From Haliotis rubra (Eukaryota): a DNA stretch of 64,000 nucleotides. Shown one piece after another: positions 3,076 to 26,232 of the stretch. The translations under genes and the position numbers were made by a program. The notes under the pieces were generated by a model. It did not search any database. It had not been told where the DNA came from and saw only the letters and a list, made by a program, of their open reading frames with translations. Numbering within the stretch: the first letter of the stretch is position 1; the number at the start of each line of letters is the position of its first letter. The DNA lies in the NCBI RefSeq assembly GCF_003918875.1, contig NW_025765448.1, positions 1,364,001 through 1,428,000 on the forward strand, read 5' to 3'.

Positions 3076-4708
3076 TGTCTTGGTATATGACTTTAAAACG
3101 AGACTTGATTAATTCTTCTCTATCGTCAACAGTTCAACACGTGCCGAGAGAAAACAGGAAGTGTCGTCACCAAGGAAGGACAACTCTAAACTGGACTCAG
3201 TCTGTTCATAGTTCTGAAATATGATCTTTCTAAAAATCGCAGAACGTGTTTGAAATTTGGTATATCTACTCATTTATATTAATTATAAATTTCAGATTTG
3301 ATATATCTGTTGTATTGAATCTGTAGCAAATTGTCTTTCCAGAAAGACTGAAAAAATAAAGCCTTTCAAGAGAAATATTCGAGTCTGGATCGGGCAGACA
3401 GGTGGTCTACTCACACGAAGATTATGAGATGTGGTTTTAACTTTTGGTTTTAACTTTTTCAAAGAATAGAATATCAGATAACAATTAGTTGGTGTTTTGT
3501 TCAAAACGTAAAACACTAACTGTGAACAATAAGTCTGTGATCATTTTTTTCACATTCCTACCACATTTTTTTAACGATAGCATGCTAGTTTTAATTCTAC
3601 CTCTGTGATACTATAGTTGTTATGCTGTCCATTGTCGACACAGTTTTTGTATGGTGACGATAGGAAAGGGAGTCAGGGGTGGGTGGCTGGGAATGTTCTG
3701 ATCCTTTTCCCACTTTGACTTTGAAACAACTTTCAACAAGACAAGGGCTTTCAAGGGCTTTCCCACGGGTCATATGGGTTTCTCATATATTTAATGCTTT
3801 GTGAGAGTTAAATGGTTATCGATAACGACACCCAGACTTGGCCTTCTTTACAACTTTTATAAGAGTGCTATCTTACACACGTTCTAGGTCCCTGCGGGGT
3901 TTATATTTTCTACAAAAATGTAACTCTTGAGTTCTTATATATATGATATTAACATTATGTCCATAAATATAGATCTGTAAACAAACACAGGTAGATGAAA
4001 CGGGTAGAATCTGTAAATTACACATTGTATTGATATATCCCGTGAATATCCGGGTTAGACCAGACGTGGAGTGGAGGTGCTAAATATTACTCGATCCATC
4101 TAGACTGTACCCGTTAAGATCCGGGTTAGAATTGGTCTTCAGTAACCCATGCTTGTAAGAGGCGAATAACAGGATCGGGTGGTCGGGCTCGCTGACTTGG
4201 TTGACACATGTCATCGTATCGCAATTGCGTAGATCGATGCCCCAGCTGTTGATCCCTGGATTGTCTGGTCCAGACTCGATTATTTACAGACTGCCGCCAT
4301 AAAGCTGGCATATTGCTGAGTGCGGCGTAAAACTAAATTCACGCATTCACTTGTATTGATATACTACCGTTTGTTATTTTTGAAAATATATTTTCCGGTT
4401 GTACGCAAACAACTAAACAAAATGTGTATTCTCCTTATTGTTTAATAACAATTCCTGTTTGAATATCGTGTTCAAGGCATTGTTGATGGATTATTGTCAA
4501 CAAATAAACATGGATTTTCGTATGTTGACGAAGGATAACATGTGACTCTTTTACTCTCAGTTCAGCCTGGCTCAAGAATATCGCGTGTAAAGAAAGTAAA
4601 TATTTCTACATGCCAAAATAATGCACATGTACATGTAATTAACTGTTTATAACACCGTGTGCAGAGAATGATGAAGTCACTTAATAATTTGTCCACATTT
4701 GTCGGAGT

Positions 4709-4802
4709 GGGCGTGGCCTAAATTAGACTCAGATGTCACCCTCCGGACAAATACCATGACGTCATCAATGACGTGACGTCATAATCACCGGGTTATTGAA
4801 AG
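4709..4802 (+). promoter_or_regulatory. Promoter copy 1: GC box, two perfect CREs, TATA-like element
   Basis: GGGCGTGGC 4709-4717; TGACGTCA 4757-4764 and 4774-4781; TTATTGAAAG ~4793. Confidence 0.7.
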
Positions 4803-4865
4803 CGCAAGACGTGTTTTACATCGCTAGATTCTTTCACCCTATGGATACCATTTAAAGATAATTTA

Positions 4866-5344
4866 ATGGGCTGTAACCAGTCCCTCCTCACGAAGACCCC
4901 CAGGAGGGGAGGGAGAGGGAGAAAACAAAGGGAGATTACCCTTGTAGAAAGGTGGACAGAGTTTCGAGACTGGGTTCGGAGACAGCGGGGCAAGAACAGG
5001 GTGGTGTCAATATCTATCAAACCAAATGACAAGTCACGTGTCATAAGTAAGTTTTTCTCGTCTTGGCATCATATGTTAAAGTGAGTGAGTTATTAAGATA
5101 GTATTTAATTTAACATCGGCAACATTTCAGACAGCCGAAAGAACTTGATGGTTTAGTAACAAAAATGTCAGCAAAGGAAACTGAGATCGTTATATACCTC
5201 TATGAAAAAAACTAATCATATGAGCATCACCATGATGTTTTGCACCAGAACTGTGTCACTAATATTGTGAGCAGGATACATACCAGAAAACCCTTTTGGC
5301 ACCTCTAACGACCTAAATGGGTTCCTGGGGATATATTGTAGTTT

Positions 5345-5386
<42 letters not shown>

Positions 5387-5445
5387 CCCATTTCTGGTGT
5401 CCCCCGCCGTGAGTAGTGCTGGAATAGCTAGTAGTAGTAGTAGTC

Positions 5446-5479
<34 letters not shown>

Positions 5480-7185
5480 TTGTGGTGTGTTGTGGTGGTG
5501 GTAGTGGTAGTAGTAGTAGTTGTGGTTGTCGTGATGGTGGTAGGAATAATAATAATAATAACATACCTATCTTGGAATGCAATTTCGAGACAAGTTCCAG
5601 AATGCCCAAATTCAAGACAAACAACGGGCCGAGTATAAATCTCGCTTAAAGAAAATCTGGAGTTCAGAGCTCAATGCTCGAAACAAGGTCAAAGCCACCA
5701 ATACTTTTTCTGTGCCAGTCCTTTCCTATTCATTTGGAGTAGTTGATTGGAGAAAACAAGAAATACAGAGTCTTGACCGCCTGGCCAGAAGGATCATGTC
5801 TGATAACAGAGCTCACCAGCATCATTCCTCTCTTAATCGTTTATATATGCCAATCGATTCTTGAGGTCAGGGTTTGATTAATGTGGGGGCTCTTCATGAT
5901 AGAATTTTATTGTGTACTTTTGCACATATTTATTTATCGGATGATCCTCTGGTGATGCATGTCAAGACTCATGAGAAAGCAAGGAATTCCACAGCTATTT
6001 TAAGCGTGCCAAGGTTGTTTGACAGAATCTGAAATTTGAAGTTGATTTTGTTGATGGCGATGTCCTGCTGGACGGTACATCCATGGGAGTAAACCAGGTG
6101 AAGTTATTCACCAAGTCTGCTCAGAGTCGGTCATTTGTGAAAAAGCTTTCTGAGAAACCATTGCATCGTGTGTACATGCAGTGCGTGGAACAGAATAGCA
6201 GTCTGACCGACTTCTTTGCCTGGATGAAGTCGGCTGGTCTTAAATGTGAAACTGAGGGCTTTCTTTTTGCTGCTCAGGACCAGTCACTTCCCACTCGTAA
6301 TCGCCAAAATGTGATTCTTAAAGAAAATATTAACATGAAATGCCGACTGTGTAATAAAATTAAAGAGACTGTCCAACACATTGTCACTGGCTGCCCTTCC
6401 TTGGCACAAACAGCATATCTGAAACGACATGATGGCATGGCTCGCTGCTTCACTATCGTCTTCGCCATTCCTGTGACTTTGACTCCGAGGTCCATCCATG
6501 GTACGATCCTGAACATGTCCAGGGCGTCATGGAAAATGATGCTTTCAAACTTCTGTGGAATAGGCCCATATACAGCCTCAGAAGAATTCCAGCCAACAAA
6601 CCTGATCTTGTCCTTTTGATAAAGCCAATGAATTTATTTATATCATTGAATTTTCTGTCCCTTTTGACAGCAACGTGATTGGCAAGATTCAGGAAAAGCA
6701 TGATAAATACCTCGCCTTTGAAATGTCTCGCTTGCATCCCAAATACACTGTCGTCAGGCTCCCCATTGTTCTCGGTGCCCTTGGTTGGTACCTCCTGATC
6801 TCTTGACGCAGATCAGGAGAGTGCCCGGGTTCTCCACCGGGAGCACAGCCCTTCTGACACTCTGGATAATGCAGAAGGCTGCAGTGTTGGGGAGCCTTCA
6901 TATTCTCCTGAAAGTTCTTGGCGGGTTCCACTAGGCGGTGTTTTCGCTGTCTGGGCTGCGTGTAGAGGGGGCGAGGGCCTTGAGCTGATGATGAGCCTTA
7001 CCAGCCTGACTGTGCCAGGATCACCCGAACCCTCTCTGCTGCATTCATAATCTGTAAAACATAATAGTAGTAGTAGTAGTAGTAGTAGAAGCAGCAGCAA
7101 TAGTATAAGAAGCAGTTGTTATAGCAGTACCAGTGGTAGAAGAAATAGTAGAAGATGTAGTAGCAGTTTAGTAAAATGTAGTAGC

Positions 7186-7219
<34 letters not shown>

Positions 7220-8028
7220 CTAATCTCGCGCGACCATTTAAAAGGACAGTTTTGAAACAATAAAATATCTTTAATATTTGTACAAGTACCCCTCATTATA
7301 AATAAGAATGGCAGAATAGGAAACAGCATAATTATTATCATCATATAGTTATGAAATTATGTAGAGAAAATTAAATCCGAACTACGAAAACAATGAAGGC
7401 TGCTAGCGTTTTGTTCGGCAAATTCGTATTGTCAAATCCAGTCTTCAAGTGTATACCCCCTTTCGCCCAACAGTATATAGCTGTAGTATTGCTAACATGA
7501 ACATTAAGCCTATCTATAACTCACACACCACATTTGGTACTATTTGCATATAGCTTCAGAACTAAATATGAGTTCTCCTTGAATGCAGATCGCATCGTTG
7601 TGGCAGATGAAACCATGGAAGAAATCAAGGTGGTTGAGACAGATATATCCATTGAGAATGACAACTCGAGGCACAAGGTGCCCCGACCAAGGGCAGCCAA
7701 AGGCAAGCGTACACCACACGTACCCAATGCCCAGTCTCACACAGAGGAACAAAAGGACATTGCTAATCTGTCCTCAGAAGACGTCACTGCAAAGAAGAGG
7801 ATCAGACCAAAAGCAGCTAAAGGACCGAGGACAAGGCCGCAGGAGATCCTCCCCGGAGTTGTTACTGAGGACGACGACTCCGTTGCTGAATGCAGCGTCA
7901 TCAAGCACAAGACCACCATTGACAATGATGTTCCTCCTTCCAAAAGCCTCTTCAGAAGGATTCGCCCAAAGGCTGCAAAGGGCAAGCGCAAAGTTGGATC
8001 GCGTGATGAGAAAAGGCGGAACACTTGA
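4866..8028 (+). CDS. Same family, copy 1 (~206 aa; +1 nt near 8010 truncates the C-terminus)
   Basis: Exon 1 4866-5046 (AA|GTAAGT) plus exon 2 7589-8028 (tgcag|AT), phase-compatible. The conserved tail LEAQRSTQECLDAWMKRKLCEEGVE continues in the shifted frame to 8101. Confidence 0.7.
5346..5560. repeat. (TAG)n/(TGG)n/(AAT)n microsatellite in intron 1 of the tandem gene
   Basis: Homologous tracts at 7061-7220, 13079-13315, 17650-17750 and 22660-22900; both N-gaps fall in these tracts. Confidence 0.9.
5561..7060 (+). mobile_element. 5'-truncated R4/Dong-like non-LTR retrotransposon (RT end, CCHC, restriction-like endonuclease), degenerate
   Basis: YLG.Q, ELNARNKVKATNTFSVPVLSYSFG, ETEGFLFAAQDQ, CRLC..ETVQHIVTGC, RHD, KPDL..IIEF motifs with frameshifts. 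Lies in intron 1 of gene copy 1, directly after (AAT)n. Confidence 0.88.
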
Positions 8029-8291
8029 GGCACAGCGCTCAACCCAGGAGTGCCTGGATGCGTGGATGAAGAGGAAGCTGTGTGAGGAGGGAGTGGAGTA
8101 GAGGACTCGGGGATGATCGGGAGTGGGATGGAATGGATCAGGTAGAGATTCAGGATGAAGGAAACAAAGGCGCAAGAAAACTCCAACCCCTGATGTATGT
8201 CTACCGGCATTATGATCCTGTTCCCCGTCAATAATAACTGATTCCGACCCTGTCCGACTCACTTGGAATGATGTGCTGTACATGGATGTGG

Positions 8292-9710
8292 TCACAGATG
8301 TATATTCACACAATGGAGGTGTTCTAGATAGAGACTAGAAGTGTGCTTCGCCACAGATGTATATTGACACAATGGAGGTGTTCTAGATAGAGACTAGAAG
8401 TGTGCTTCGCCACAGATGTATATTGACACAATGGAGGTGTTCTAGATAGAGACTAGAAGTGTGCTTCTGCCACAGATGTATATTCACACAGTGAAGGTGC
8501 TCTAGATAGAGACTAGAAGTGTTCTTCGTCACAGATAGATACTGACACCATGGAGGTGTTCTACATGGAGACTAGAAGTGTTCTTCACCAGAGATAGATA
8601 TTGACACAATGGAGGTGTTCCAGATAGAGACTAGAACTGTTCTTCACCAGAGATATGATATTAACACAATGAAGGTGTTCTAGATAGAGACTAGAAGTGT
8701 TCTTCTCAACAAAGTGATGTTGACACAATGATTGAAGGTGTTCTAGATATAGACTAGAAGTGTTCTTCGTCACAGATAGATACTGACACCATGGAGGTGT
8801 TCTACATGGAGACTAGAAGTGTTCTTCACTAGAGATTGATATTGACACAATGGAGGTGTTCTAGATAGAGACTAGAAGTGTTCTTAGCCACTTATTGATA
8901 TTGGCACAATAAAGGTGTTCTAGATAGAGACTAGAAGTGTTCTTCGTCACAGATAGATACTGACACCATGGAGGTGTTCTAGATGGAGACTAGAATTGTT
9001 CTTCGCAACAAAGTGATATTGACCCAATGGAGGTGTTCTAGATAGAGACTAGAAGTGTTCTTCGCAACAAAGTGATGTAGACACAATGTACACAGATAGA
9101 TACTGACACCATGGAGGTGTTCTAGATAGAGACTAGAAGTGTTCTTCGCAACAAAGTGATGTAGACACAATGTACACAGATAGATACTGACACCATGGAG
9201 GTGTTGTAGATAGAGATTAAAAGTGTTCTTCGCAACAAAGTGATGTAGACACAATGTGCACAGATAGATACTGACACCATGGAGGTGTTCTAGATAGAGA
9301 CTAGAAGTGTTCTTCGCAACAAAGTGATGTAGACACAATGTACACAGATAGATACTCACACCATGGAGATGTTCTACATGGAGACTAGAAGTGTTCTTCT
9401 CACCAGAGATAGATATTGACACAATGGAGGTGTTCTAGATAGAGACTAGAAGTGTTCTTCGCCACAGATAGATATTGACACAATGGAGGTGTTCTAGATA
9501 GAGACTAGAAGTGTTCTTCGCCACAGATAGATGTTGACACAATGGAGGTGTTCTAGATAGAGACTAGAAGTGTTCTTCACTACAGATAGATATTGACACA
9601 ATGGAGGTGTTCTAGATAGAGACTAGAAGTGTTCTTAGCCACTTATTGATATTGGCACAATAGAGGTGTTTTGGATAGAGACTATTGGTGTTCTTCAACA
9701 CAGCTGGAGA
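8292..9710 (+). repeat. 59-bp minisatellite, 3' UTR of copy 1 (~23 units)
   Basis: Unit CACAGATAGATATTGACACAATGGAGGTGTTCTAGATAGAGACTAGAAGTGTTCTTCGC. Confidence 0.95.
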
Positions 9711-10048
9711 TGAACCTTGACACAGTAAGAGTGTTCGAGACAAAGACTCTGAGTTTGTCTATAGATTCAGTGTTAAGGCGCCATTTCATTCAGCGTTGAC
9801 TTTGGGGATTTTCTGATTTGATAGATACATTTATCTGAGCATTAATGTAAACACCCGAGTTTAGCATGCTATGTACAGAGTGTTTTTATCTAAATACCTG
9901 AATATATTTCAGGAAATGATGTTAAAATATTTTTTGCGTTCAATTTAATTCATTAATTGTATTGTTATGAAAATACCCAAAAAGTTAGGAAAAATGCTAA
10001 AACAGTATTATTATATTCATTTGTTTTTGTTAATTGTATTGTTATATG

Positions 10049-10054
10049 AATAAA
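10049..10054 (+). terminator. Probable polyadenylation signal of the tandem gene family
   Basis: AATAAA in homologous context in all four copies: 10049, 15808, 19757, 25354. Confidence 0.55.
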
Positions 10055-10210
10055 ATTGCAAAATACTTCATGTTCGATCAATTATGTTTCGTTATCACAT
10101 CGGCGATACATACAAACATACGGTAGGCGAGGTTTCCGTATATATGCCGGGTTTCCCTTTAAGTAAGTAGACAGATCACAGCATGGTTTCCAGGTTGTGT
10201 GTAACACTAA

Positions 10211-11182: not shown

Positions 11183-11491
11183 ATAAGAGTATTCCCCAAA
11201 ACAGGAGTTAAATGCTGGAACACGACAGTAAATTGGATCTCTGGAGGGTTCTCAGTTGAGTTGTCAGACAGTATGTGGACAAAACATGCTCCACGTCTTT
11301 AAATGATCCAATTTTTGGACAAGAACATAACTTCCTTTTATCATCATCAGCGAGTGAGTGAGTGAGTGGGTTCTGACTTTGCTTTGAACAATATTCCAGT
11401 TATTTCATCAGCGGTGAGTGAGTGAGAAATATTTTAAGCCCTTTCAAAATAGCAGTGGATAATCGAGCCGGGCTCTGGACGTGACGAGCTA

Positions 11492-11608
11492 GGGCTCCTT
11501 TCACGAAGCAACCTTTACTAAGGTTAACCTTAACTCCCGTTCTTCAAAATTGCACTAACGTTACCTTAGTGACTTACGATCAACTTAGTGCTTTGTGAAA
11601 GGAAGCCC
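11492..11608. mobile_element. Short MITE
   Basis: TIR GGGCTCCTTTCACGAAGCA / TGCTTTGTGAAAGGAAGCCC; empty site GAGCTAGTAGACAG in the paralog at ~20044. Confidence 0.75.
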
Positions 11609-12270
11609 TGGTAGACAGTGCTTTCCCTGGAGAGTGCAAGGTCGGGGCGCTGGGTCAAGATATTAAGTCGGGAAACTGAGGAATTTAAGCTCATGTCGAC
11701 TAGTACCAATAAAACCTACTCTTCATTAGTCTTCAAGCATGTAAACGTTAAGAAGCGTGTGTTGCTTTGAGGCGAACCCAGATTATACAGTTATTTATTT
11801 CAGGGGCCCATTTATGTTCGCTATGTCGGTTCTAGGACTTACAATGAAAATGTCAGCGAGCGAGGAAACGCAATCCAGTATTGTCGCTCCGTGCTACAGT
11901 CAGTCTTGTGTGGGGGTGGAGTGAGGGATCCAGTTGGGTTTACGCTGCTTTTCGAAATAGTTTAACAGTATCAGTGCGGGGGGACACCAGAAATGGACTT
12001 AACACATTCTACTCGGGCAGGGAATCGAATCTGGGTATTCGGCGTGGAAGATGGTTGTGGGGCGGGAGTTGACAATTCCTACCAAGACAATAATCAATAA
12101 TATCAAAAGATATAATGTTTCATGAAAATATGCACAATACTAGTATAAAATGTCAAAATTATAAAGCCTAAAATGAATTTAGTGAATTATTCTAATAACT
12201 GAATAGTCCAAGATGACTCCGCAGACAGGTCACATCCGCCTATGCAGTTGTAGGTAGACGGGTGTGTAGT

Positions 12271-12369
12271 GGGCGTGGCTAAAATGGGACTCAGAATGAT
12301 GTCAGCATATGTAACATTATTGTGACGTCATCAATGGCGTGACGTCATAATCACCGGGTTATTGAAAGC
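12271..12369 (+). promoter_or_regulatory. Promoter copy 2: GC box and two CREs
   Basis: GGGCGTGGC 12271-12279; TGACGTCA 12323-12330 and 12340-12347. Confidence 0.7.
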
Positions 12370-12431
12370 GCAAGGCGTGTTTTTCATCGCTAGATTCTTT
12401 CACCCTATGGATAACGTTTAAAGATTACTTA

Positions 12432-13267
12432 ATGGGCTGTAGCCAGTCCCTCCTCACGAAGACCCCCAGGAGGGGAGGGGGAGGGGGAGGGAGAAAAACA
12501 AAGGGAGATGACCCTTGTAGAAAGATGGACAGAGTTTCGAGACTGGGTTCGGAGACAGCGGGGCAAGAACAGGGTGGTGTCAATATCTATCAAACCAAAT
12601 GACAAGTCACGTGTCATAAGTAAGTCTTTCTCATCTTGGCATCATATGTTAAAGTGAGTAAGTTGTTAAGTTAATGTGTAATTTAATATCGGCAACATTT
12701 CAGACAGCCGAAAGAATTTGATTGTTCAGTAACAAAAATGTCAACAAAGGAAACTGAGATCGTTATATACATGTACCTCTATAAAAAACTAATCATACGA
12801 ACATCTTATCATAGAGGTCTGTACCAGAACTGTGTCACTAATATTGTGAGCAGGATACATACCAGCTGCAGACAACCCTTTTGTCATCACTAACGAGCAA
12901 AATGGGTTCCTGGGGATATACTGTAGTATANNNNNNNNNNNNNNNNNNNNNNNNNNNNNNNNNNNNNNNNNNNNNNNNNNNNNNNNNNNNNNNNNNNNNN
13001 NNNNNNNNNNNNNNNNNNNNNNNNNNNNNNNNNNNNNNNNNNNNNNNNNNNNNNNNNNNNNNNNNNNNNNNNNNNNNNAGTACGTAGTGGCAGTAGTAGT
13101 AGTAGTAGTAGCGGCAGCAATAGTATAAGAAGTAGTTGTTATAGCAGTACAAGTGATAAAAAGACATAGTAGTAGTAGAAGATGTAGCGGCAACAGTAGA
13201 AGTAGCTGTAATAACAGCATCAGTGCTAGTAGACGTAGTAGTTGACGTAGTAGTAGACATAGTAGAC

Positions 13268-13315
<48 letters not shown>

Positions 13316-14209
13316 ATACTAAACTTGCGCGACCATTTAAAGGCAAGTTTTTTTAACCATAAAATATATTTCATATTATTACAAGTACCCCTCATTATAC
13401 ATAAGAATGACAGAATAGGAAACAATATAATTATTATTATCATCATATAGTTATGAAATTAGGTAGAGAGAAAATGAAATCCGGACTACGAAAATCAATG
13501 AAGCCTTCTAGTTTTGTTATCAAATTCGTATTGTCAAATCCAGTCTTCAAGTGTATACTCACTTTCGCCCGACAGTATATAGCTGCAATATTGCTAACAG
13601 GAACATTAATTAAAGCCTATCTATAACTCACACACCACATTTGGTACTATTTGCATATCGCTTCAGAAATAAATATGAGTTCTCATTGAATGCAGATCGC
13701 ATCGTTGTGGCAGGTGAAACCGTTGAAGAAATCCAAGCGTGGTTGAGACAAATATATTCATTGAGAATGACAACTCAAGACACAAGATGCCCCGACCCAG
13801 GGCAGCCAAAGGCAAGCGTACGCCACACGTACCCAATGCTCAATCTAAGACAGAGGAACAAAAGGACATTGCTAATCTGTCCTCAGAAGACGTCACTGCA
13901 AAGAAGAGGATCAGACCAAAAGCAGCTAAAGGACCGAGGACAAGGCCACAGGAGATCCTCCCCGGAGTTGTAGCTGAAGACGACGACTCTGTTGCTGAAT
14001 GCAGCGTCATCAAGCACAAAACCACCATCGAAAACGATGTTCCTCCTTCTAAAAGCCTCTTCAGAAGGATTCGCCCAAATGCTGCAAAGGGCAAGCGCAA
14101 AGTTGGATCCCGTGACGAGAAGAGCGGGTCACTTGAGGCACAGAGCTCAACCCAGGAGTGCCTGGATGCGTGGATGAAGAGGAAGCTGTGTGAGGAGGGG
14201 AGTGAGTAG
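12432..14209 (+). pseudogene. Same family, copy 2 (frameshifted as assembled)
   Basis: Exon 1 12432-12619 has an extra A (GAGAAAAAC) leading to a premature TGA. Exon 2 13696-14209 has +2 nt at ~13733-13739. These may be assembly errors. Confidence 0.6.
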
Positions 14210-14414
14210 AGGACGCGGGGGATGATCGGGAGAAGGTAGGGATGGATTAGGTGGTGATTCAGGGTGAATGAGACAAAGGCGCAAGAAAACTCCAACCGCC
14301 TGATGTATGTCTACCGGCATAATGATCCTGTCCCACTGTACAGCTAACTGATCCCGACCCACGTGGAATGGTGTGTTGTACCCCAAGACTATGCTGATGA
14401 TCACATGGAAGTGT

Positions 14415-15500
14415 CCACAGATAGATATTGGCACAATGGAGGTGTTCTAGATAGAGACTAGAAGTGTTCTTCGCCACAGATAGATATTGACACAATGGAG
14501 GTGTTCTAGATAGGGACTAGAAGTGTTCTTCGCCACAGATAGATGTTGATACAATGGAGGTGTTCTAGATAGAGACTAGAAGTGTTCTTCGCCACAGATG
14601 TATATTGACACAATGGAGGTTTCTAGATAGAGACACTTCAACAGATGTATATTGACACAATGGAGGTGTTCTAGATAGAGACAAGAAGTGTTCTTCGCCA
14701 CAGATAGATATTGACACAATGGAGGTGTTCTAGATAGGGACTAGAAGTGTTCTTCGCCACAGATAGATGTTGATACAATGGAGGTGTTCTAGATAGGGAC
14801 TAGAAGTGTTCTTCGCCACAGATGTATATTGGCACAATGGAGGTGTTCTAGATAGAGACTAGAAGTGTTCTTCGCCACAGATGTATATTGACACAATGGA
14901 GGTGTTCTAGATAGAGACTAGAAGTGTTCTTCATACAGATGTATATTCACAGATGTATATTGGCACAATGGAGAGGTAGAGACTAGTGAGTGTTCTTCGC
15001 CACAGATGTCTAGAGATAGAGACTAGAAGTGTTCTTCGCCACAGATGTATATTGACACAACATGTATATTCACACAATTGAGGTGTTCTAGATAGAGACT
15101 AGAAGTGTTCTTCGCCACAGATGTATATTGACACAGAAGTGTGCTTCATGGAGGTGTTCTAGATAGAGACTAGAAGTGTTCTTCGCCACAGATAGATATT
15201 GATACAATGGAGGTGTTCTAGATAGAGACTAGAAGTGTTCTTCGCCACAGATGTAGACACAATGGATTTCTAGATAGAGACACACAGATGTATATTGAGG
15301 AGGTGTTCTAGATAGAGACTAGAAGTGTTCTTCGCCACAGATAGATATTACAATGGAGGTGTTCTAGATAGAGACTCGACGTTTTCTTCGCCATAGATTG
15401 ATATCAACAAAATGGAGGTGTTCTAGATAGAGACCAGAAGTGCTCCTAATTATAAATTTTTGTTGTTCACACGGTGGAGATGTTCGAGATGGAGACTAGT
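14415..15500 (+). repeat. 59-bp minisatellite, copy 2 (~18 units)
   Basis: Same unit. Confidence 0.95.
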
Positions 15501-17416
15501 GTATATTAAGACACAGTAAGAGTCTTCGAGACAAAGACTCTGAGTGTGTCTATAGATTCAGTGTTAAAGGCGCCATTTCAGTCAGTGTTGACCTTGGGGA
15601 TTTTCTGATTGGATAGATATATTTATCTTGCTATGTATACAGTGTTATGATGTAAATACCTAAAAATGTTTGAGGAAATGGTGTTAAAAATAGTTTTGTA
15701 TTCAATTTAATTCGTTAATTGTATTGTTATGAAAATGCCAAAAAAGTTAGGAAAATGCTAAAACAATACTTTTATGTTCATGTTTTTGTTAATTGTATTG
15801 TTATGTGAATAAAATTCCAAATATTTCATGTTTGATTAATTATGTTTCGTTATCACAGCGGCCAAAGATACAGCTCCGGTAGGCGAGGTTTCCGTATTAA
15901 AGCGTATATAGAGTTCCTCTGTAGTGAATCGACAGATCACAAAATATTTTCCAGGTTTTGTTCAAAACTTTTGGAGCATTTCAGCTTACAAAACAAGAGT
16001 GAGTGAGTTTTGTTTTACACCTCACTCAGCAATATTCCAGCTATATGTCGGCTGTCTGTAAATCATCGAGTCTGGACCAGACAATCCAGTTATCAACAAC
16101 ACGAGCATCGATCGATCTACGTAATTGGGATACGATGACATGTGTCAACCAAGTCAGCGAGCCTGACCACCCAATCCCGTTAGCCGCCTCTTACGACAAG
16201 CATGGGACACTGAAGATCAATTCTAACCCGGATCTTCACGGGTCTTATAAAACACGAGTTATCATAGGTTTGTGTAGGTGGAGTGAGTGAGGGGGTCGAG
16301 TTTTACGTTGCTGTTGGAAATAGTTTAGCAGTATCAGGGACAGGGAAACATATTACAGAAAATGAAATCCGATCGACTGAAGCCAGTGAAGTTGATTGTA
16401 GATCAACTAAAACATTAAAAACTATATAGCAGCACCATATTTGCCTATTTTGTTACAAGAAATCTAGAATCGAAATCATCCCCGTAAATTATTTGGACCC
16501 GAAACGGTGAAAAGGGAAATAGTTAATCAGTTGCCAAAATATATTTCTCAAATTCGGCCTCGAACCTGCATTGACAGAACACCCTGAAAGTTTATGAGAA
16601 ACCTTTATTCCGTTGTTGTACAGTCAGTCACAAGTGCTCTCCCTTAGATAACGAACTCGCTCTCACCTTGTCCATCCGTATTTCAATATGTTTGTTATCT
16701 CCAACCTAAAGCCCCAGTCGAGGAGGACGGTCGAAAATTATAAGTAGAAGTGGAAAAACAAAATTCAAGTGCTTATTTCACGTGTAGTGTAACTTATTTT
16801 ATAAAATTATGATCCAGACCTTAAACCTAACAGGCCGTGGGCACATAGCTAGAATATTTTCAAGTTGATCTGAACTTTCACCAGGTGAAAATGGAACCTT
16901 GATCGGGTCACAGCAGGGAATAAACGTCTCATTGGACAAGAATGAAATATTTTCGAACTGATCAGTGTCAATGACAGAGAGCGTGAGTGAGTGAATGAGA
17001 TTAGTTTCTGTTAGGACTATTCCAGAAATATCATGGCGGGGGACGCCAGAAATGGGCTTCACATATTGCACCCATGTGGGGAATCGGTGTGACGAGCGAA
17101 CGCTTTAACCATTATTCTACCCTACCGATTCTGTGTGGGTGGAAGTTGGTTATGGGACGGAAGTTGACAATAACTACTAGGATTCCCCACGATGGTGATG
17201 TATGACAAAGAGACAAGAATCGGGAATATCAACAGATTATATATTTCATGAAAATATGCTCAATATTATATGAAGATGTCAAACAATTCAGCCTAAAACT
17301 CGGTTAATTCATTATTCTAATAACCCACCATCATCTACGACCTCGGTCAGCTACACAACGACTCCACCGACAAGTCGCGTCCGCCGATGCAGTTGAAAGT
17401 AGGCAGGTGTGTAGTG

Positions 17417-18991
17417 ACAAGTCATCTGTCATAAGTAAGTCTTTCTCGTCTTGGCATCAAAAGTTACAGTGAGTGAGTTATTAAGTTAATATTTAATTTA
17501 ACATAGACGTCAGAAATAGATTTTTCAATGACAAAAATGTCAACATAGGAAAGTGAGATCGTTATAGAAAAACTAATCATATGAACATCAATGAGATGTA
17601 AGATATATTGTAGTATACTATACATGTACTAGGTATAATCGTAGGTGTAGAAGTAGTGGTGGTGGTGGTGGTAGCAGCAATAGCAGAAGAAGTAGTTGGT
17701 AGAAGAAATGTTATTATTAATAGTGGTAGCAGCATCAGCATCAGCAGTAGNNNNNNNNNNNNNNNNNNNNNNNNNNNNNNNNNNNNNNNNNNNNNNNNNN
17801 NNNNNNNNNNNNNNNNNNNNNNNNNNNNNNNNNNNNNNNNNNNNNNNNNNNNNNNNNNNNNNNNNNNNNNNNNNNNNNNNNNNNNTGATAGTTTCTTTAA
17901 CCATAAAATGCCTTTCATATTTGTGTGAGTACCCCTCATTATAAATACGAATGACAGAATAGGAAACACTATGTATACTATTCACACTTTGAGAAGGATC
18001 AAATCATGGATTCAGCAGAAAACTATGATGTGGGGTCAAATTTGGTTGAAATATCTAAGCTTGCTGTAAGCATGGATCCTAGGTTTCAGTATGTCATTTC
18101 ATCTTGTGTATGCCAAACCTGCTACTGATAGGTGTTGTGTACTTGTCAATGCCTCGTTCGATGATTTGCAAAATGGATGAATGGTGCCATGAAAACCATT
18201 ACAATACAATTTCAAATTATAAATCTACGTTTAAGTAAAGTTGTGAAGTTTTGTGATCTTTTAGCAAAGAGTGAGTAGTATATATTTTCGTTGTTGAAGT
18301 ATACAGACGAAAAGCAACGAGGCCTGCTAACTGTTTGTCACCTCCAGTCTTCACGGTATGCTCTTTTCCCGACAGTATAGCTGCAATCTTGCTAACAGGC
18401 CTATTTACAGCTCACACACCACATTTGGTACTATTTGCATATCACTTCAGAACTAAATATGAGTTCTCCTTGAATGCAGATCGCATCGTTGTGGCAGATG
18501 AAACCATGGAAGAAATCAAGGTGGTTGAGACAGATATATCCATTGAGAATGACAACTCGAGGCACAAGGTGCCCCGACCAAGGGCAGCCAAAGGCAAGCG
18601 TACACCACACGTACCCAATGCCCAGTCTCACACAGAGGAACAAAAGGACATTGCTAATCTGTCCTCAGAAGACGGCACTGCAAAGAAGAGGATCAGACCA
18701 AAAGCAGCTAAAGGACCAAGGACAAGGACACAGGAGATCCTCCCCGGAGTTGTAGCTGAGGACGACGACTCTGTAGCTGAATGCAGCGTCATCAAACACA
18801 AGACCACCATTGACAACGATGTTCCTCCTTCTAAAAGCTCTTCAGAAGGATTCGCCCAAAAGGCTGCAAAGGGCAAGCGAAAAAAAGTTGGATCACGTGA
18901 CAAGAAGAGCGGGTCACTTGAGGCACAGCGCTCAACCAAGGAGTGCCTGGATGCGTGGATGAAGAGGAAGCTGTGTGAAGTGGGAGAGTAG
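17417..18991 (+). pseudogene. Same family, copy 3 (promoter and most of exon 1 deleted)
   Basis: GTGTAGTG is fused directly to ACAAGTC...ATAA|GTAAGT at 17416/17417, about 330 bp missing relative to copy 2 (12272-12601). Exon 2 18480-18991 is still open. Confidence 0.75.
17975..18280. mobile_element. Tc1-like MITE in intron of copy 3
   Basis: TIR TACTATTCACACTTTGAGAAGGATC / GATCTTTTAGCAAAGAGTGAGTAGTA in TA context. Confidence 0.65.
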
Positions 18992-19139
18992 AGGGCGGGG
19001 GTGATCGGCGGGGAGATAGAGGGATCAGGTGGAGATTGAGGATGAAGGAGATAAGGGCGTAAGATAACTCCAATCTCCTTATGTATCTGATCCCGACACA
19101 GGTGGAATGGTGTTTTGTACACCAGCACTATTTTGATGA

Positions 19140-19498
19140 TCACATGGATTGATATTGACACAGTGGAGGTGTTCCACACACAATGGAGGTGTTCTAGATA
19201 GAGACTAGAAGTGGTTTTCGCCACAAATATATATTGACACAATGGAGGTGTTCGAGATAGAGACTATAAGTGTTCTTCGCCACACATGGCTATTGACACA
19301 ATGGAGGTGTTCTAGATAGAGACTATAAGTGTTCTTCGCCACAGATTGATATTGACACAATGAAGGTGTTTACACACAATGGAGGTGTTCTAGATAGAGA
19401 CTATAAGTGTTCTTCGCCACAGATTGATATTGACACAATGGAGGTGTTCTACACACAATGAAGGTGTTCTACACACAATGGAGGTGTTCTAGATAGAT
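19140..19498 (+). repeat. 59-bp minisatellite, copy 3 (~5 units plus 20-bp sub-repeats)
   Basis: Same unit, CTATAA variant. Confidence 0.9.
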
Positions 19499-20444
19499 AA
19501 AGGGCCTTGGGAATTTTCTGATTTGTAAGACGTATTATTGTAAGCCCCCTGTTATAAACATCCGAGTTTAGCATGCTATGTACACAGTGTTACGATCTAA
19601 ATGTCTAAAAATATTTGAGGAAATAATGTTAAAAATAGTTTTGTATTCAGTCGTTTTCGTTATTTAGATTGTGATTAAAATACATAAAAAGTCAGGAAAT
19701 AATACTAAAACATGTTTCACTTTCTTGTTTTCTTTCGTTAATTGTATTACTGTGTAAATAAAATTCCAAACATTTTATGTCCGATCAATTGTCTTTCGTT
19801 CTCACGTCGGCGAAAGATAAAGTGCCGGTAGGTGAGTGAGTCGACAGATGCATTGTTTCCAGGTTGTGTACAAAGCAGTATTTTTTTAATGAGTTAAGCT
19901 GTGGAATACGAAAGCCAAGTTGATCTTTAGAGGTTTCTGTTTGCTGATATTGAAAGCTGAATTGTCAGACAAAACATGGACTATACTTGCTCCACGTCTT
20001 CCAATAACACATCTTTGTATAAGAGCCGGGCACTCGACGTGACGAGCTAGTAGACAGTGACTTTCCCTGGAGAGCGCCAGGTCGGGTGTTGGGCACGTCG
20101 TGGGAAGACGTAATACCTTGCCTGACGCATTGAGGGGATGAATTAAACATGGATGGTTTGCGTGGCGTCAGTGTAACAAGACAGGTGTCTTTGGGGAAAC
20201 TGCAGCATGGTATCTCAGTGGACAATATTAAGATTCTGAAGCATTTGTTTACAAACATGTATAAATTCGCTTATCCTGAACGTGACTTTTCACCTCTGCG
20301 TGATGACCATTAGCTTTGACCACCATGTCAGACAATCCCATGAATATCCGTATTTTATTCGTGGTTTACTTGGGTTGTTAAGAGGTGTTTCTTGTTTTAC
20401 GCCGCACTCCGATAGTCCAGTTATATAACACAGTGGCCTTTTAA

Positions 20445-21586: not shown

Positions 21587-21974
21587 TATGTCGGTTCGCT
21601 GGGCGTGAGTGGAGTGAGTCAGGGGGCTGGTTTTTTACATTGCTAATGAAAACATGGAGCGATATAAGATCGAGGGAAGACTACAAATCGGTTTCACACC
21701 TTGTACTCGTGTGGGGAATCGAACCTGGGACCAGCAAGCGCTTTAACCACAAGGCTACTTCAGCGCTTCTGTGTGAGTGGGACCCATGAGGATGACGTTT
21801 GACAACAGACAAGAATCAGGAATGTCAAAAGACATACATTTCATGAAACTGTGCGTAGCACTTCTTCTAAATATTAAACATTTTAAGCTATTCGAATAAC
21901 CCGCCACCATTTCCAAATTTGATAAGCTCCAAAATGACTCCGCCGATGCAGTTATAGATACATCAGCGTGTAGT

Positions 21975-22068
21975 GGGCGTGGCTTAACTGGACTCAGATG
22001 TCAGCATATGTAACAATATGGTGACGTCATCAATGGCGTGACGTCATAATCACCGGGTTATTGAAAGC
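21975..22068 (+). promoter_or_regulatory. Promoter copy 4: GC box and two CREs
   Basis: GGGCGTGGC 21975-21983; TGACGTCA 22022-22029 and 22039-22046. Confidence 0.7.
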
Positions 22069-22130
22069 GCAATACGTGTTATAGATCGCTAGATACTTTC
22101 ACCCTATGGATAACGTTTAAAGATTACTTA

Positions 22131-22862
22131 ATGGGCTGTAACCAGTCCCTCCTCACGAAAACCCCCAGGAGGGGAGGGGGAGGGAGAAAACAAAGGGAGA
22201 TGACCCTTGTAGAAAGATGGACAGAGTTTCGAGACTGGGTTCGGAGACAGCGGGGCAAGAACAGGGTGGTGTCAATATCTATCAAACCAAATGACAAGTC
22301 ACGTGTCATAAGTAAGTCTTTCTCATTTTGGTATCATATGTTACAGTAAGTGGTTTATGAAGTCAACATTTGATTTAACATCGGCAACTTTTAAAAAAAT
22401 GTCAACAAAGGAAGGTGAAATAATTATATACCGCAAAGAAAAAGCTAATCATATGAACATCAATCTCAACACTAAGATCTGTTTTGTTTCTTTGTTACTT
22501 TATGCTCCACTTTGTAATATCCCAGCTACACTCTTTGTGAAGGAAGTTTGACAATAGTTGTGCACCAGAATATCGAGTGATTGATCATGATACGGTGCCA
22601 GGAATTCCTTTTTGTAACCTCTTACGACCAACATGGGTACCTGAGGATATACTGTATATAGTGGCAGCAGCAGTAGTAGCAGTAGTACAAGTAGTAGAAG
22701 TAGCAGCACTATCAGTGGCAGTAAGTACGTGCGTTTATGGACCATTAAAGGGAATTCAGAAAAAAAACTTTCACATTTTTACACGGATTCTTCTTTATAG
22801 GTAGGCTCGAAAGAGAAACAGTATAGGAAACAGTATAGTAGTAGAAGATGTTGTAGGAATAA

Positions 22863-22900
<38 letters not shown>

Positions 22901-24561
22901 CCATTTAAAGGCCAGTTCTTAAAACCATAAAATATATTTAATATTTTTACAAGTAGCTGTAGAAGACTTATTAAAAACTGAACACGGCAGAAAATCTGAA
23001 ACAATATATTTATTATCATCATCGTTAGGGAAATATATTACAAAAAATTAAATCCGATCGACTGAAAGCAGTGAAGTTGATTTGAGGTCAAGTAAAACAT
23101 TAAAGACTACATAGCACCATATTTGCCAGTGTTTTCGAAGAAATCGTGGCGACCCCACCGTCCCCAGTAAGAAAGAAAGTATTTCCGTCATCAAGTGTGA
23201 TTTCCCAGTAGTGATGCCATATGTTCTGACAAATTACACAGAAATATCGTATGTGTACTAGTATATTGAAAAACATCCAATAATCACGTTTACCCAATAT
23301 AGACAAGGAGTATCCAAGGCCAGGTAGTCATGATGTTTGTCAAATCGATTCCCCAATTACTTCAGTAATTAAATCGTTGCAAAAGAAGTTAATGTGATTA
23401 TTTAACTAAAGTGTTTCTCAACGCCTCTGACGATGTCATCCTAAAAGATGTCATTGCATAAATTATATAAAAACATTAAATCGTTGGGACTTTGACCCTC
23501 AAATGCCCATCACAGCCTTTTGGTACAGTTCCATAACTTCATGTGCTTGTAAGCTATTAATCCTGGACAGGATAAGACCCCAGTCACCCATGCATGTCGG
23601 AATTTACAAGTGTTTGTTATTTTACGCCGCACTCATTCATTTTATAAACCGCCAGCTTCCCTGATTCAGACTCGTTTATTTTCTGATAATAGTTGCGCCT
23701 TAAAACAACATTCATTCACTTACATCCATCGCGACGTTTTATGGGCGTTGGGATAGCCCCGTGGTTAATGCATTGATTCGAATCTCTTACTGGTACAATG
23801 GGTGATTGCCAGTTTCCCCGACATGAATAAACTGACGAGCGAAATAAAGTATGCAGTTTTCTGGTGGTTATACTAATACAAACAGGATGGTAATTAGATA
23901 CCGGTATCAATGTTGTGTATTGGACTCATTTGGTATCATTCACATTTCGCTTTAGAATTTAATAGGAATTTTACAAATTATTGTTTCAATTTCAGACCAG
24001 CAAACATTAAATATGGAACAAATCGGCTCCGTATCCTCGTCGGATACAGATGCCATCGTTGTGGTAGATGAAACCGTTGAAGAAATCAAGGTGGTTGAGA
24101 CAAATATCTCCATTGAGAATGACAACTCAAGACACAAGATGCCCCTAACCAGGGCAGCCAAAGGCAAGCGTACGCCACACGTACCCAATGCTCAATCTCA
24201 GACAGAGGAACAAAAGGACATTGCTAATCTGTCCTCAGAAGACGTCACTGCAAAGAAGAGGATCAGACCAAAAGCAGCTAAAGGACCGAGGACGAGGCCA
24301 CAGGAGATCCTCCCCGGAGTTGTAGCTGAAGACGACGACTCTGTTGCTGAATGCAGCGTCATCAAGCACAAAACCACCATCGAAAACGATGTTCCTCCTT
24401 CTAAAAGCCTCTTCAGAAGGATTCGCCCAAATGCTGCAAAGGGCAAGCGCAAAGTTGGATCCCGTGACGAGAAGAGCGGGTCACTTGAGGCACAGCGCTC
24501 GACCCACGAGTGCCTGGATGCGTGGATGAAGAGGAAGCTGTATGAGGAGAGGAGAGAGTAG
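22131..24561 (+). CDS. Uncharacterised MGCNQS-initiated basic protein, copy 4 (intact, ~248 aa)
   Basis: Exon 1 22131-22311 (AA|GTAAGT, phase 1) plus exon 2 23996-24561 (ttcaatttcag|AC; an in-frame alternative acceptor starts at 24050). Open frame to TAG; paralogous to three other copies. Confidence 0.8.
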
Positions 24562-24639
24562 AGGACGCTGGGGATGATCGGGAGGGGGCTGGGATGAATG
24601 AGGTGGAGATTCAGGAGAAAGGACTATTCTGATGATAAC

Positions 24640-25040
24640 ATGGAAGTTTCTAGATAAAGAGTTCACAGCATATAGGTATTGGCACAATGGGGGTGTTCTA
24701 CGCACAATGGAGGTGTTCTAGACAGAGACTAGAAGTGTGCTTCACCACAGATAGATGTTGACACAGTGCAGGTGCTCTAGATAGAGACTAGAAGTGTTCT
24801 TCGCCACAGATGTATATTGACACAATGGAGGTGTTCTAGATAAGACTAGAAGTGTGCTTCACCACAGATTGATGTTGAAACCATAGAAGTGTTTTAGATA
24901 GAGACTAGAAGTGTTTTTCGCCACAGATAGATATTGACACAATGGAGGTGTTCTAGATAGAGACTAGAAGTGTTCTTCGCCACGGATGTCTATTTCACAC
25001 CGTAGAGGTGTTCTAGATAGAGAATAGAAGTGTTCATCAC
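24640..25040 (+). repeat. 59-bp minisatellite, copy 4 (~6 units)
   Basis: Same unit. Confidence 0.9.
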
Positions 25041-25721
25041 TAAAGGTTCTATTTCGGTCAGTGTTGACCTTGGACGTTTTTGAAGATGTTGTATTATAAG
25101 CTTCCTGTAATAAGTATCCGAGCTAAGCATTCTGTATACGGTGTTATGATATAAATACCTAAATATGTTTGAAGAATGTTAAGAAATATTGTTTAATCGT
25201 ATTGTCATGTAAAAAGAATTATAAATACTTCATGTTCGATCAATTATATTTCGTTATCACATTGATGATCTCCATGCAAAAAACTATTTGTGCAAATAAT
25301 GTTAAAAACATCTTTTGAATCCAATTCTGTTTCGTTAATTTTATCGTTATTTGAATAAACTTCCAAACTACAGTTCACTGAATTGTTTTCCTTATCACGT
25401 CGGGGATATAGAAGCGGGTGCCTCAGCAGTAAAAGACGAAAGATCACAATATGGTTTCAAAGTTGTGTTCAAAATTTTGGGGAACGTTTTCAACACTAAG
25501 GCATTTAATCCATCAAAATAGAGTTAAAACTCTGAAATATGAGAATGAATTTGACCTTTCGAATTGCCATCCATACTGAAAGATGAATTGTCAGATACAG
25601 TTACGTTGAGTAATTCACGAACAAAACAGGCACCACGTCTTCACATTACCAGTATTTGGACAGGAGTGTAACTTCCATACATCTTTGAACAGTGTTCCAG
25701 TTATTTCACCACCAGTGAGTA

Positions 25722-26220: not shown

Positions 26221-26232
26221 ATAAATGAACAT

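What the first reader, a model, noticed from the sequence alone, without database searches (positions are those of the whole stretch)
4700..25400. Four-copy tandem array of an unrecognised lipid-anchored, basic, repeat-motif protein gene
Seen: splicing two short ORFs in phase 1 gives a ~206-248 aa protein. It begins MGCNQS, followed by a polybasic stretch, a Trp-rich helix (LVERWTEFRDWVRR), acidic spacers alternating with three basic motifs (RPRAAKGKR, RPKAAKGPR, RP[K/N]AAKGKR), and a conserved tail STQECLDAWMKRKL. Promoter, splice sites, 3' UTR VNTR and AATAAA are co-duplicated. Established: MGCxxS fits N-myristoylation plus Cys palmitoylation. Inference: a lineage-specific, membrane-tethered, disordered multivalent scaffold undergoing birth-and-death evolution. 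The basic motif loosely resembles the second half of capping-protein-interaction motifs (RPK-x6-P) but lacks LxHxT. I recognise no known family.
Basis: partly seen in the sequence, partly recalled or inferred. Interest (0 to 1): 0.8.

Follow-up and report, generated by a model that had tools for sequence, protein, structure and literature searches.

The report
Abalone-only basic protein gene array
Four head-to-tail copies of a small two-exon gene in the blacklip abalone look like a real protein-coding family with no known relatives, but only one copy is intact and its proposed role as a fat-anchored scaffold is untested.

Summary
The array is real. Four same-strand units of about 3.5 kb each carry the gene only; the spacers between them are unrelated. 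Copy 4 alone has an open frame (22131-22311 joined to 24050-24561 gives 230 aa, or to 23996-24561 gives 248 aa). Copy 1 has a +1 frameshift that removes the tail. Copy 2 has +7 and +2 indels. Copy 3 lacks the promoter and the exon 1 coding part. Both N gaps lie in intronic microsatellites.

Exon 2 evolved under frame-specific purifying selection (dN/dS 0.14-0.29, p about 1e-5). The three RP[KR]AAKGxR motifs keep the peptide while most of their codons differ synonymously.

In one coded run of a second organism, contigs cover the exons and 3' UTR but not the intron, and stop exactly at the predicted donor. This suggests a spliced mRNA.

Pfam, PDB, a word search of 5.8 billion proteins and an exhaustive HMMER scan of 1.84 billion representatives found no relative of exon 2.

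MGCNQS fits the myristoylation pattern. However, RNA-like coverage starts 16 nt after that ATG, and a TATA-like box lies 15 nt before it, so the lipid anchor is unproven. The capping-protein motif is not matched.

Verdict: a genuine, decaying orphan family. Its function is inferred only.

The parts
4706..10141 (+). Copy 1 unit. Paired CREs at 4757-4764 and 4774-4781. Exon 1 CDS 4866-5046. Intron 5047-7588, with a LINE reverse-transcriptase fragment at about 5577-7064. Exon 2 starts at 7589. A +1 nt at 8015 gives a premature stop at 8026-8028 (206 aa). The ancestral stop is at 8099-8101. The 59/84-nt minisatellite runs from about 8170 to 9815. AATAAA at 10049-10054.
12235..15897 (+). Copy 2 unit, broken. 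CREs at 12323-12330 and 12340-12347. Exon 1 is 12432-12619, with +7 nt at 12488-12494 and a stop at 12600-12602. Intron 12620-13695 holds the N gap 12931-13078. Exon 2 is 13696-14209, with +2 nt at 13734-13735. Minisatellite about 14300-15443. AATAAA at 15808-15813.
17415..19870 (+). Copy 3 unit, 5'-truncated. Only the last 20 nt of exon 1 plus the donor remain (17415-17434). Intron 17435-18479 holds the N gap 17751-17885. Exon 2 is 18480-18991, with -1 at 18837, +1 at 18858 and a +3/-3 pair. Short minisatellite about 19107-19515. AATAAA at 19757-19762.
21939..25400 (+). Copy 4 unit, the only intact one. CREs at 22022-22029 and 22039-22046. TATA-like TTTAAAG at 22116-22122. Exon 1 CDS 22131-22311. 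The intron runs to 23995 (long form, 248 aa) or to 24049 (short form, 230 aa). The exon 2 CDS ends with its stop at 24559-24561. Minisatellite about 24667-25038. AATAAA at 25354-25359.
22131..22311 (+). Copy 4 exon 1 coding part (60 codons + 1 nt). It holds the MGCNQS acylation motif, a polybasic/Gly stretch, and a predicted amphipathic Trp helix at residues 26-41.
   Evidence: Exon 1 diverges only 2-3% between copies, against 7-14% for the promoter and 11-20% for the intron.
23996..24561 (+). Copy 4 exon 2 coding part. Acidic and basic blocks alternate, with motifs at 24145-24171, 24265-24291 and 24424-24450, and a C-terminal helix. The alternative start of the exon is at 24050.

Best explanation
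This is a small, taxonomically restricted protein-coding gene family of abalone. It was amplified locally into four head-to-tail gene-sized units and is now decaying. Copy 4 is intact, copy 1 is one frameshift away from intact, and copies 2 and 3 are pseudogenes.

The working gene has two exons, a promoter with two perfect cAMP-response elements, and a long 3' UTR holding a private 59-nt minisatellite. It encodes a basic, mostly disordered protein of 230-248 aa with these parts:
- an N-terminal MGCNQS dual-acylation motif plus a polybasic patch;
- an amphipathic Trp helix;
- three copies of a selected 9-residue basic peptide, RP[KR]AAKGxR, separated by acidic spacers;
- a C-terminal helix.

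Most likely mode of action (inferred, not shown): the N-terminus holds the protein on the cytoplasmic face of membranes. The repeated basic peptide acts as a multivalent short linear motif that docks an acidic partner, either a protein groove or acidic lipids. Expression is switched by CREB/ATF-type factors.

Shown: array anatomy, frame integrity, frame-specific purifying selection, peptide-level conservation of the motif, and absence of detectable relatives.
Indirect: splicing and expression.
Inferred: lipidation, localisation, partner binding and cAMP control.
For: - Anatomy and lesions.
- Both copy 4 splice forms are in frame, with canonical GT..AG sites in all copies.
- Exon 2 selection: dN/dS is 0.14-0.29 for the older pairs (for example c1-c4, 23.3 of 114.7 synonymous sites against 18.7 of 392.3 nonsynonymous sites changed, Fisher p 1.8e-6). 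Variable columns by codon position are 14/10/34. The other two sense frames give ratios of 1 or more.
- Motif conservation: the three motifs share the peptide, but 4-7 of their 9 codons differ synonymously. This points to an old internal repeat held by selection on the peptide.
- Exon 1 is 2-3% divergent, against 7-20% in its flanks.
- Expression (run X4, second organism): contigs lie on 22147-22311, 24054-24616 and 24782-25308, with zero depth across the unique intron bins. Two contigs stop exactly at 22311, and one carries 21 further letters that do not fit the intron. DNA contigs of X1 and X5 run on into the intron. Depth arithmetic places an unlisted 18.2x contig on about 22283-22311 plus 23996-24083, which is the 22311^23996 junction.
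- The family also occurs in organism B's DNA (X5).
- Summed depth in X1 is about 4x single-copy over exon 2 (406 against about 100), which fits four paralogs and not a transposon (rough only).
- No relatives: Pfam, word search, exhaustive HMMER, PDB.
- Disorder plus terminal helices.
- PS00008 pattern met.
- Six of the nine TGACGTCA sites in the window are the paired sites 85-110 nt upstream of the three ATGs; 1.1 would be expected by chance.
Against: - No run on record as RNA holds the gene. X4's kind is unknown, and its spliced junction is inferred from contig ends and depth arithmetic, not listed by the tool.
- X4 coverage starts at 22147, after the ATG at 22131. TTTAAAG at 22116 predicts a start site near 22146, which would leave MGCNQS out of the mRNA.
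- The Kozak context of that ATG is weak (T at -3).
- Three of four copies are damaged.
- Copy 4 carries about nine derived amino-acid changes, including RP to LT in motif 1. Against copy 2 it shows 15 nonsynonymous and 3 synonymous differences (ratio 1.46), consistent with relaxed constraint.
- Exon 1 is also conserved at synonymous sites, so its conservation does not prove that it codes.
- One antisense frame shows an equally low dN/dS.
- No partner, localisation or lipidation data exist.
Confidence: 0.5

Rival explanations
1. Same real gene, but not lipid-anchored. Transcription starts about 30 nt after the TTTAAAG box, downstream of the ATG at 22131. Translation would then begin at Met24 (copies 2 and 4) or further on. 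The product would be a soluble, basic, disordered protein whose KRIRPK-type motifs act as nuclear-import or nucleic-acid/chromatin-binding patches.
For: - TTTAAAG at 22116-22122 lies only 15 nt upstream of the ATG, and the classical CRE-plus-TATA layout fits it.
- The first RNA-like letter in X4 is 22147, and bin arithmetic shows nothing laid on 22024-22146.
- The organism B DNA contig (X5) runs unbroken across 22085-22317, so a graph branch is not an obvious cause of that start.
- The ATG has T at -3.
- A K[KR]x[KR] pattern sits in motif 2.
Against: - Copy 1 has ATT instead of Met24, so it would lack an exon 1 start.
- The frame is open from 22131 to the donor and joins exon 2 in phase.
- MGCNQSL matches the acylation pattern, which is unlikely by chance.
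- Contig 5' ends usually fall short of true starts. Several expressed variants in X4 could also have caused graph tips to be clipped.
Confidence: 0.25
2. A dying family. All copies, including copy 4, are no longer under selection, and any transcripts are residual noise or a non-coding RNA. The coding signature records past function, not present function.
For: - Three of four copies carry frameshifts or a truncation.
- The c2-c4 ratio is 1.46, with many derived changes in copy 4, including in motif 1.
- No relative or annotated protein was found, although another note (s1-320400) suggests that the searched collection holds this genome's NCBI proteins.
Against: - Copy 4 keeps 230-248 codons open, with intact splice sites, promoter and poly(A) signal.
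- RNA-like spliced contigs occur in a second organism.
- Some indels sit in runs prone to error in an assembly built in part from Nanopore long reads (PMC6774278), for example the A-run at 8015 and the G-rich run at 12488. They may not be real.
Confidence: 0.15
3. The coding frame is on the minus strand. Hydrophobic antisense ORFs overlap exon 2 (for example 7737-8231, 18628-19242).
For: One antisense frame has dN/dS 0.15-0.24 and only 1-2 stops per copy. Antisense ORFs of 151-204 aa exist in copies 1-3.
Against: - The low ratio is expected, because third codon positions coincide with those of the sense frame.
- The antisense ORF is cut to 84 aa in copy 4.
- The splice signals GT..AG, the poly(A) signal and the promoter are all on the plus strand.
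- RNA-like contigs end at the plus-strand donor.
Confidence: 0.03
4. The units are copies of a mobile element or virus-derived cassette, or an assembly artefact that multiplies one gene.
For: - Only the gene-sized unit is repeated; the spacers are unrelated and rich in transposon fragments.
- The assembly was scaffolded partly with RNA-seq pairs, and two gaps sit in introns.
Against: - No transposase, reverse-transcriptase or viral domain occurs in the unit itself, and the exhaustive search gave no hits.
- All copies are local and on the same strand.
- Summed DNA depth is about 4x, not hundreds.
- The copies differ by 5-10%, with distinct introns and lesions.
- X1 shows several variant contigs at the paralog-specific positions.
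Confidence: 0.04

Closest known systems
GAP-43 / MARCKS / BASP1 (CAP-23) class of lipid-anchored, natively unfolded basic proteins
   Same: All are small, mostly disordered and highly charged. They have an N-terminal acylation signal, basic effector patches and no globular domain. This is a resemblance in how the protein may work, based on general knowledge of that class.
   Different: There is no sequence relationship. This protein has three copies of a specific RP[KR]AAKGxR peptide and two terminal helices, not one Lys/Phe-rich effector domain. Lipidation is unproven here.
SH4-type dual-acylation N-termini (Src-family kinases, G-alpha i/o: MGCxxS)
   Same: Met-Gly-Cys-x-x-Ser followed by basic residues matches PROSITE PS00008.
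   Different: Only the first 6-7 residues resemble these proteins, and no kinase or G-alpha domain follows. Use of this ATG is not shown.
Capping-protein-interaction (CPI) motif proteins (CARMIL, CD2AP, CKIP-1 and others): LxHxTxxRPK(x6)P
   Same: They share an RPK core within a basic stretch.
   Different: The full motif, the relaxed first half, and even RP[KR]-x6-P are all absent from copies 1 and 4.
OAA / myxobacterial hemagglutinin lectin repeat (PDB 4fbr)
   Same: Residues 30-58 of exon 1 align with each of the four repeats on a W-x5-WV...R.K..V..SIK.ND pattern, with a summed score of 26 bits.
   Different: Each repeat scores 9.3 bits or less (i-Evalue 19 or worse). Only half a repeat is covered, and the GG/EGPIGF/NQWGG hallmarks are absent. 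Pfam finds nothing, and AlphaFold2 predicts a helix there. I treat it as chance.
Other abalone-only tandem orphan gene families noted in this scan (for example s1-320400)
   Same: These are also small, multi-copy, lineage-restricted genes in local arrays, with some copies decayed.
   Different: That family is reported as already annotated by NCBI. No protein matching this one was found in the searched collections.

Membership tests
CPI-motif proteins | Consensus LxHxTxxRPK(x6)P | tested here: not met
   Regex scans of copy 4 (both forms) and copy 1 found no full motif, no HxTxxRP[KR] and no RP[KR]-x6-P.
N-myristoylated / S-palmitoylated (SH4-like) proteins | Gly2 directly after the initiator Met, in the PS00008 context G-{EDRKHPFYW}-x(2)-[STAGCN]-{P}, with Cys3 for palmitate | tested here: met
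   MGCNQSL matches in copies 1 and 4. Copy 2 and organism B have MGCSQS.
N-myristoylated / S-palmitoylated (SH4-like) proteins | The ATG before Gly2 lies in the mRNA and is the start codon used | tested here: inconclusive
   RNA-like contigs begin at 22147 and the ATG is at 22131. A TATA-like box at 22116 is compatible with a start site on either side.
N-myristoylated / S-palmitoylated (SH4-like) proteins | Covalent lipid attached in cells | not testable with these tools
   This needs metabolic labelling or mass spectrometry.
GAP-43 / MARCKS / BASP1 | Sequence homology to a family member | tested here: not met
   No Pfam family. No hit in the word search or the exhaustive HMMER search with exon 2.
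GAP-43 / MARCKS / BASP1 | Intrinsic disorder with basic effector patch(es) | tested here: met
   pI 9.9-10.1, GRAVY -1.0, disordered side of the charge-hydropathy plot, and three +5 to +7 windows. AlphaFold2 gives coil apart from the terminal helices.
OAA-family lectins | Complete beta-barrel repeats of about 66 aa with the conserved Gly/Trp hallmarks | tested here: not met
   Only 29 residues align weakly, and a helix is predicted there.
Transposable-element or viral ORF | Transposase, RT, integrase or capsid domain, or high dispersed copy number | tested here: not met
   No domain in the unit, no library hit, and summed DNA depth about 4x single copy. The RT fragments at 6083-6619 and 26225-26995 are separate insertions.

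The most novel reading that the evidence does not exclude
A previously unrecognised, abalone-restricted family of dual-acylated, intrinsically disordered membrane adaptors. Its function would rest on a new short linear motif, RP[KR]AAKGxR, present in three copies and held by selection. It would be switched on by cAMP/CREB signalling and would turn over rapidly by tandem duplication, gene conversion and decay.
Probability: 0.25. Interest if true: 0.6.

Novelty: new variant of a known kind. Interest (0 to 1): 0.4.

Why it matters
If the gene works as proposed, it would add a new short linear motif and a new lineage-specific membrane adaptor to mollusc cell biology. It would also give a compact example of the birth, homogenisation and death of an orphan gene inside 21 kb.

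It also shows what current mollusc annotation may be missing. This is a short two-exon gene with clear coding constraint, yet no protein matching it turned up in the searched collections.

The practical value is modest until expression, the start site and a binding partner are known.

Tried and rejected
- **Known family:** Pfam scans of both exons and of the long form gave nothing above noise (DUF6582 scored 14 bits against a cut-off of 27.3). PDB sequence search of exon 2 found nothing.
- **Relatives of exon 2:** the word search of 5.8 billion proteins and the exhaustive HMMER search of 1.84 billion representatives both returned zero. Exon 1 was not searched in these large libraries, because only length-matched candidates of 33-105 aa would have been seen.
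- **Lectin lead** (4fbr): rejected as a summed score over non-independent repeats; see Closest known systems.
- **CPI motif:** rejected.
- **Structured RNA:** Rfam found nothing at gathering scores in 3000-27000.
- **Literature:** the motif strings and MGCNQS occur in none of the 8.4 million papers searched.
- **Antisense coding:** considered and rejected.
- **Transposon or assembly artefact:** considered and rejected.
- **Tools unavailable or limited:** No run on record as RNA was listed. The single read-laying run covered copy 4 only, so the indels of copies 1-3 and the two gaps could not be checked against reads.
- **Full-length fold:** not done. The spliced protein has no reference and I did not type it in, so the exons were folded separately.

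Full report
**Organism and setting.** The published assembly is a Nanopore/Illumina hybrid that was also scaffolded with RNA-seq read pairs (PMC6774278). The array lies between repeats. Downstream are a LINE fragment (26225-26995) and a choline-transporter-like gene on the minus strand (Pfam PF04515 on 34965-35471). The array is therefore intergenic and convergent with that gene.

**Anatomy.** ORF listing, repeat finding, self-BLAST and alignments show four plus-strand units: 4706-10141, 12235-15897, 17415-19870 and 21939-25400.
- Each unit is just a gene. It runs from about 160-195 nt upstream of the ATG to about 100 nt past an invariant AATAAA.
- The 1.5-2.1 kb spacers share nothing with each other except dispersed repeats.
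- Exon 1 is 181 nt of coding sequence and ends in CATAA|GTAAGT in all four units. Exon 2 begins after CAG at 7589, 13696, 18480 and 24050.
- Copy 4's intron is unrelated to the others upstream of 24044. It offers a second, pyrimidine-rich acceptor at 23996, which is also in frame.

**The gaps.** The gap at 12931-13078 lies in the copy 2 intron, and the gap at 17751-17885 in the copy 3 intron.
- The left flank of the first gap matches copy 1 up to 5342. Its right flank matches copy 1 from 7065.
- The flanks of the second gap match copy 2 at 12600-12767 and 13346-13438.
- Both gaps sit in the (GTA)n microsatellite that every intron carries.
- No reading frame crosses a gap.
- Order and orientation are collinear with the ungapped copies. 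Continuity itself could not be tested. The RNA-guided scaffolding of this assembly is a reason for caution in a multi-copy gene.

**Intactness.**
- Copy 4 gives 230 aa, or 248 aa with the 23996 acceptor.
- Copy 1 has one extra base at 8015 in an A-run. It stops at 8026-8028 (206 aa) and loses the tail.
- Copy 2 has +7 nt in a G-rich run (stop at 12600) and +2 nt at 13734-13735.
- Copy 3 has lost the promoter and the exon 1 coding sequence, and has a -1/+1 pair that destroys the first half of motif 3.
- Some of these indels may be assembly errors. I could not check them, because the one read-laying run covered copy 4.

**Is it coding?** In exon 2 the proposed frame gives dN/dS 0.14-0.29 for the older pairs (dS 0.13-0.24), with Fisher p from 1e-3 to 2e-6. 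Variable columns fall 14/10/34 by codon position. The two other sense frames give ratios of 1.06-2.9 for the same older pairs.

One antisense frame is equally low (0.15-0.24), as expected when third positions coincide. It carries stops, and in copy 4 its ORF is only 84 aa. All RNA-processing signals are on the plus strand.

The three motifs have the same peptide core, but 4-7 of their 9 codons differ synonymously. The repeat is therefore old and kept at the peptide level.

Exon 1 differs by only 2-3% between copies, while its flanks differ by 7-20%. Its synonymous sites are conserved too, so this shows constraint or conversion, not coding as such.

**Recent history.** Copies 2 and 4 are nearly identical at synonymous sites within exon 2 only (dS 0.027). 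Their 3' UTR starts differ by 21% and their intron ends do not align. This looks like an exon-limited gene conversion. Since then 15 nonsynonymous and 3 synonymous differences have arisen. About nine are specific to copy 4, including RP to LT in motif 1. That fits relaxed constraint or rapid change, and it weakens the idea that copy 4 is a well-kept gene.

**Expression.** No run on record as RNA was listed. Laying four runs on 21500-25400 gave the following.
- Runs X1 and X3 (organism A) and X5 (organism B) are DNA-like and cover the intron.
- X4 (organism B, only 41 Mb of contigs) covers 22147-22311, 24054-24616 and 24782-25308. It has zero depth in the unique intron bins.
- Two X4 contigs end exactly at 22311. 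One of them has 21 more letters that do not fit the intron. X1 and X5 contigs run on past the donor.
- X4 also has 18.2x depth at 24013-24027 but none in 23858-23988.
- The bin sums for 22286-22416 and 23989-24119 are met exactly if an 18.2x contig covers about 22283-22311 plus 23996-24083. That is my inference of a 22311^23996 junction. The tool's joint table shows only its 15 best-supported rows and does not list it.
- At eight listed positions, the exon 2 contig of X4 and X5 carries the copy 1 letters.

So a second organism, probably a congener at 3-7% divergence, has the family and very likely expresses a spliced mRNA. Summed depth over exon 2 in X1 is about four times the single-copy level. 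This fits four paralogs, although the tool warns that such depth is not a copy number.

**The start codon.** MGCNQSL fits PROSITE PS00008, with Cys3. Against it:
- Nothing from X4 lies on 22024-22146; the bin sum equals the 8 letters of the contig that starts at 22147.
- A TTTAAAG box at 22116-22122 lies only 15 nt before the ATG and would place the start site near 22146.
- Two perfect CREs sit 85-110 nt upstream of the ATG, the classical CRE-plus-TATA layout.

In its favour, contig ends usually fall short of true 5' ends. X4 also holds at least two expressed variants, which can clip graph tips. I put the lipid-anchored N-terminus at about even odds.

**The protein.**
- pI about 10, net charge +14 to +17, GRAVY -1.0, on the disordered side of the charge-hydropathy boundary. 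Windows alternate between +5 to +7 and -4 to -6.
- AlphaFold2 without an alignment gives only a helix at residues 26-41 of exon 1 (pLDDT about 80) and a C-terminal helix of about 25 residues (pLDDT about 90). The rest is coil.

**Relatives.** None were found by Pfam, PDB, the word search or the exhaustive HMMER search with exon 2. The motif strings do not occur in the paper library. A weak exon 1 similarity to the repeats of a myxobacterial lectin is best read as chance.

**Verdict.** The 'no known family' and 'birth-and-death' readings hold. The lipid anchor is plausible but hinges on an unmapped start site. The scaffold function is inference. This is a genuine, unannotated-looking orphan family of moderate interest.

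Noticed in passing
window 13690-14263 vs 24044-24615: Exon 2 of copies 2 and 4 is 95% identical with dS 0.027. The 3' UTR just after it differs by 21%, and the intron just before it does not align. This looks like a gene-conversion tract limited to the coding exon.
   Followed up: partly
window 8170-9815, 14300-15443, 19107-19515, 24667-25038: The 59-nt minisatellite, with an 84-nt variant sub-array at 9008-9427, varies from about 5 to more than 21 units between copies. Its core occurs nowhere else in the 64 kb window. This is the subject of note s1-344979.
   Followed up: partly
window 22106-22120 (also 4841-4855, 12407-12421): A conserved four-codon upstream ORF (ATG..TAA) overlaps the TATA-like box just before the main ATG. 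It matters only if transcription starts further upstream.
   Followed up: no
window 7612-7618 and 18503-18509: Copies 1 and 3 have ACCATGG (an ideal Kozak context) at the ninth codon of exon 2, where copies 2 and 4 have Val. An exon-2-only product from the promoterless copy 3 is conceivable.
   Followed up: no
window 21631-21761 (similar letters near 17080-17110): A very high-copy, SINE-like repeat: summed depth is about 6e5 in X1 against about 100 for unique sequence. It lies just upstream of copy 4 and at the point where copy 3 loses its exon 1.
   Followed up: no
window 6185-7064 and 26237-27141: Two fragments of the same LINE-type element (zf-RVT domain), 90% identical. One lies inside the copy 1 intron and one just after the array.
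   Followed up: partly
window 4109-4358, 15989-16245 and at least eight more sites between 31 and 60 kb: A dispersed repeat of about 250 nt occurs in both orientations.
   Followed up: no
window 22346/22347 joined to 24422/24474 (table 5): One DNA contig in X1 and one in X5 pair the first 35 nt of the intron with the end of exon 2 ('between: not known'). This may be a further, internally deleted family member elsewhere, or a chance local match.
   Followed up: no
window 41608-42069; 60206-61072: A coding-looking minisatellite of 22-residue units, and a Tc1/mariner-type transposase ORF (HTH_Tnp_Tc3_2 and DDE_3).
   Followed up: partly
window 22218-22304 (exon 1 residues 30-58): Weak similarity to each of the four repeats of the myxobacterial hemagglutinin lectin (PDB 4fbr). 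Judged to be chance.
   Followed up: yes
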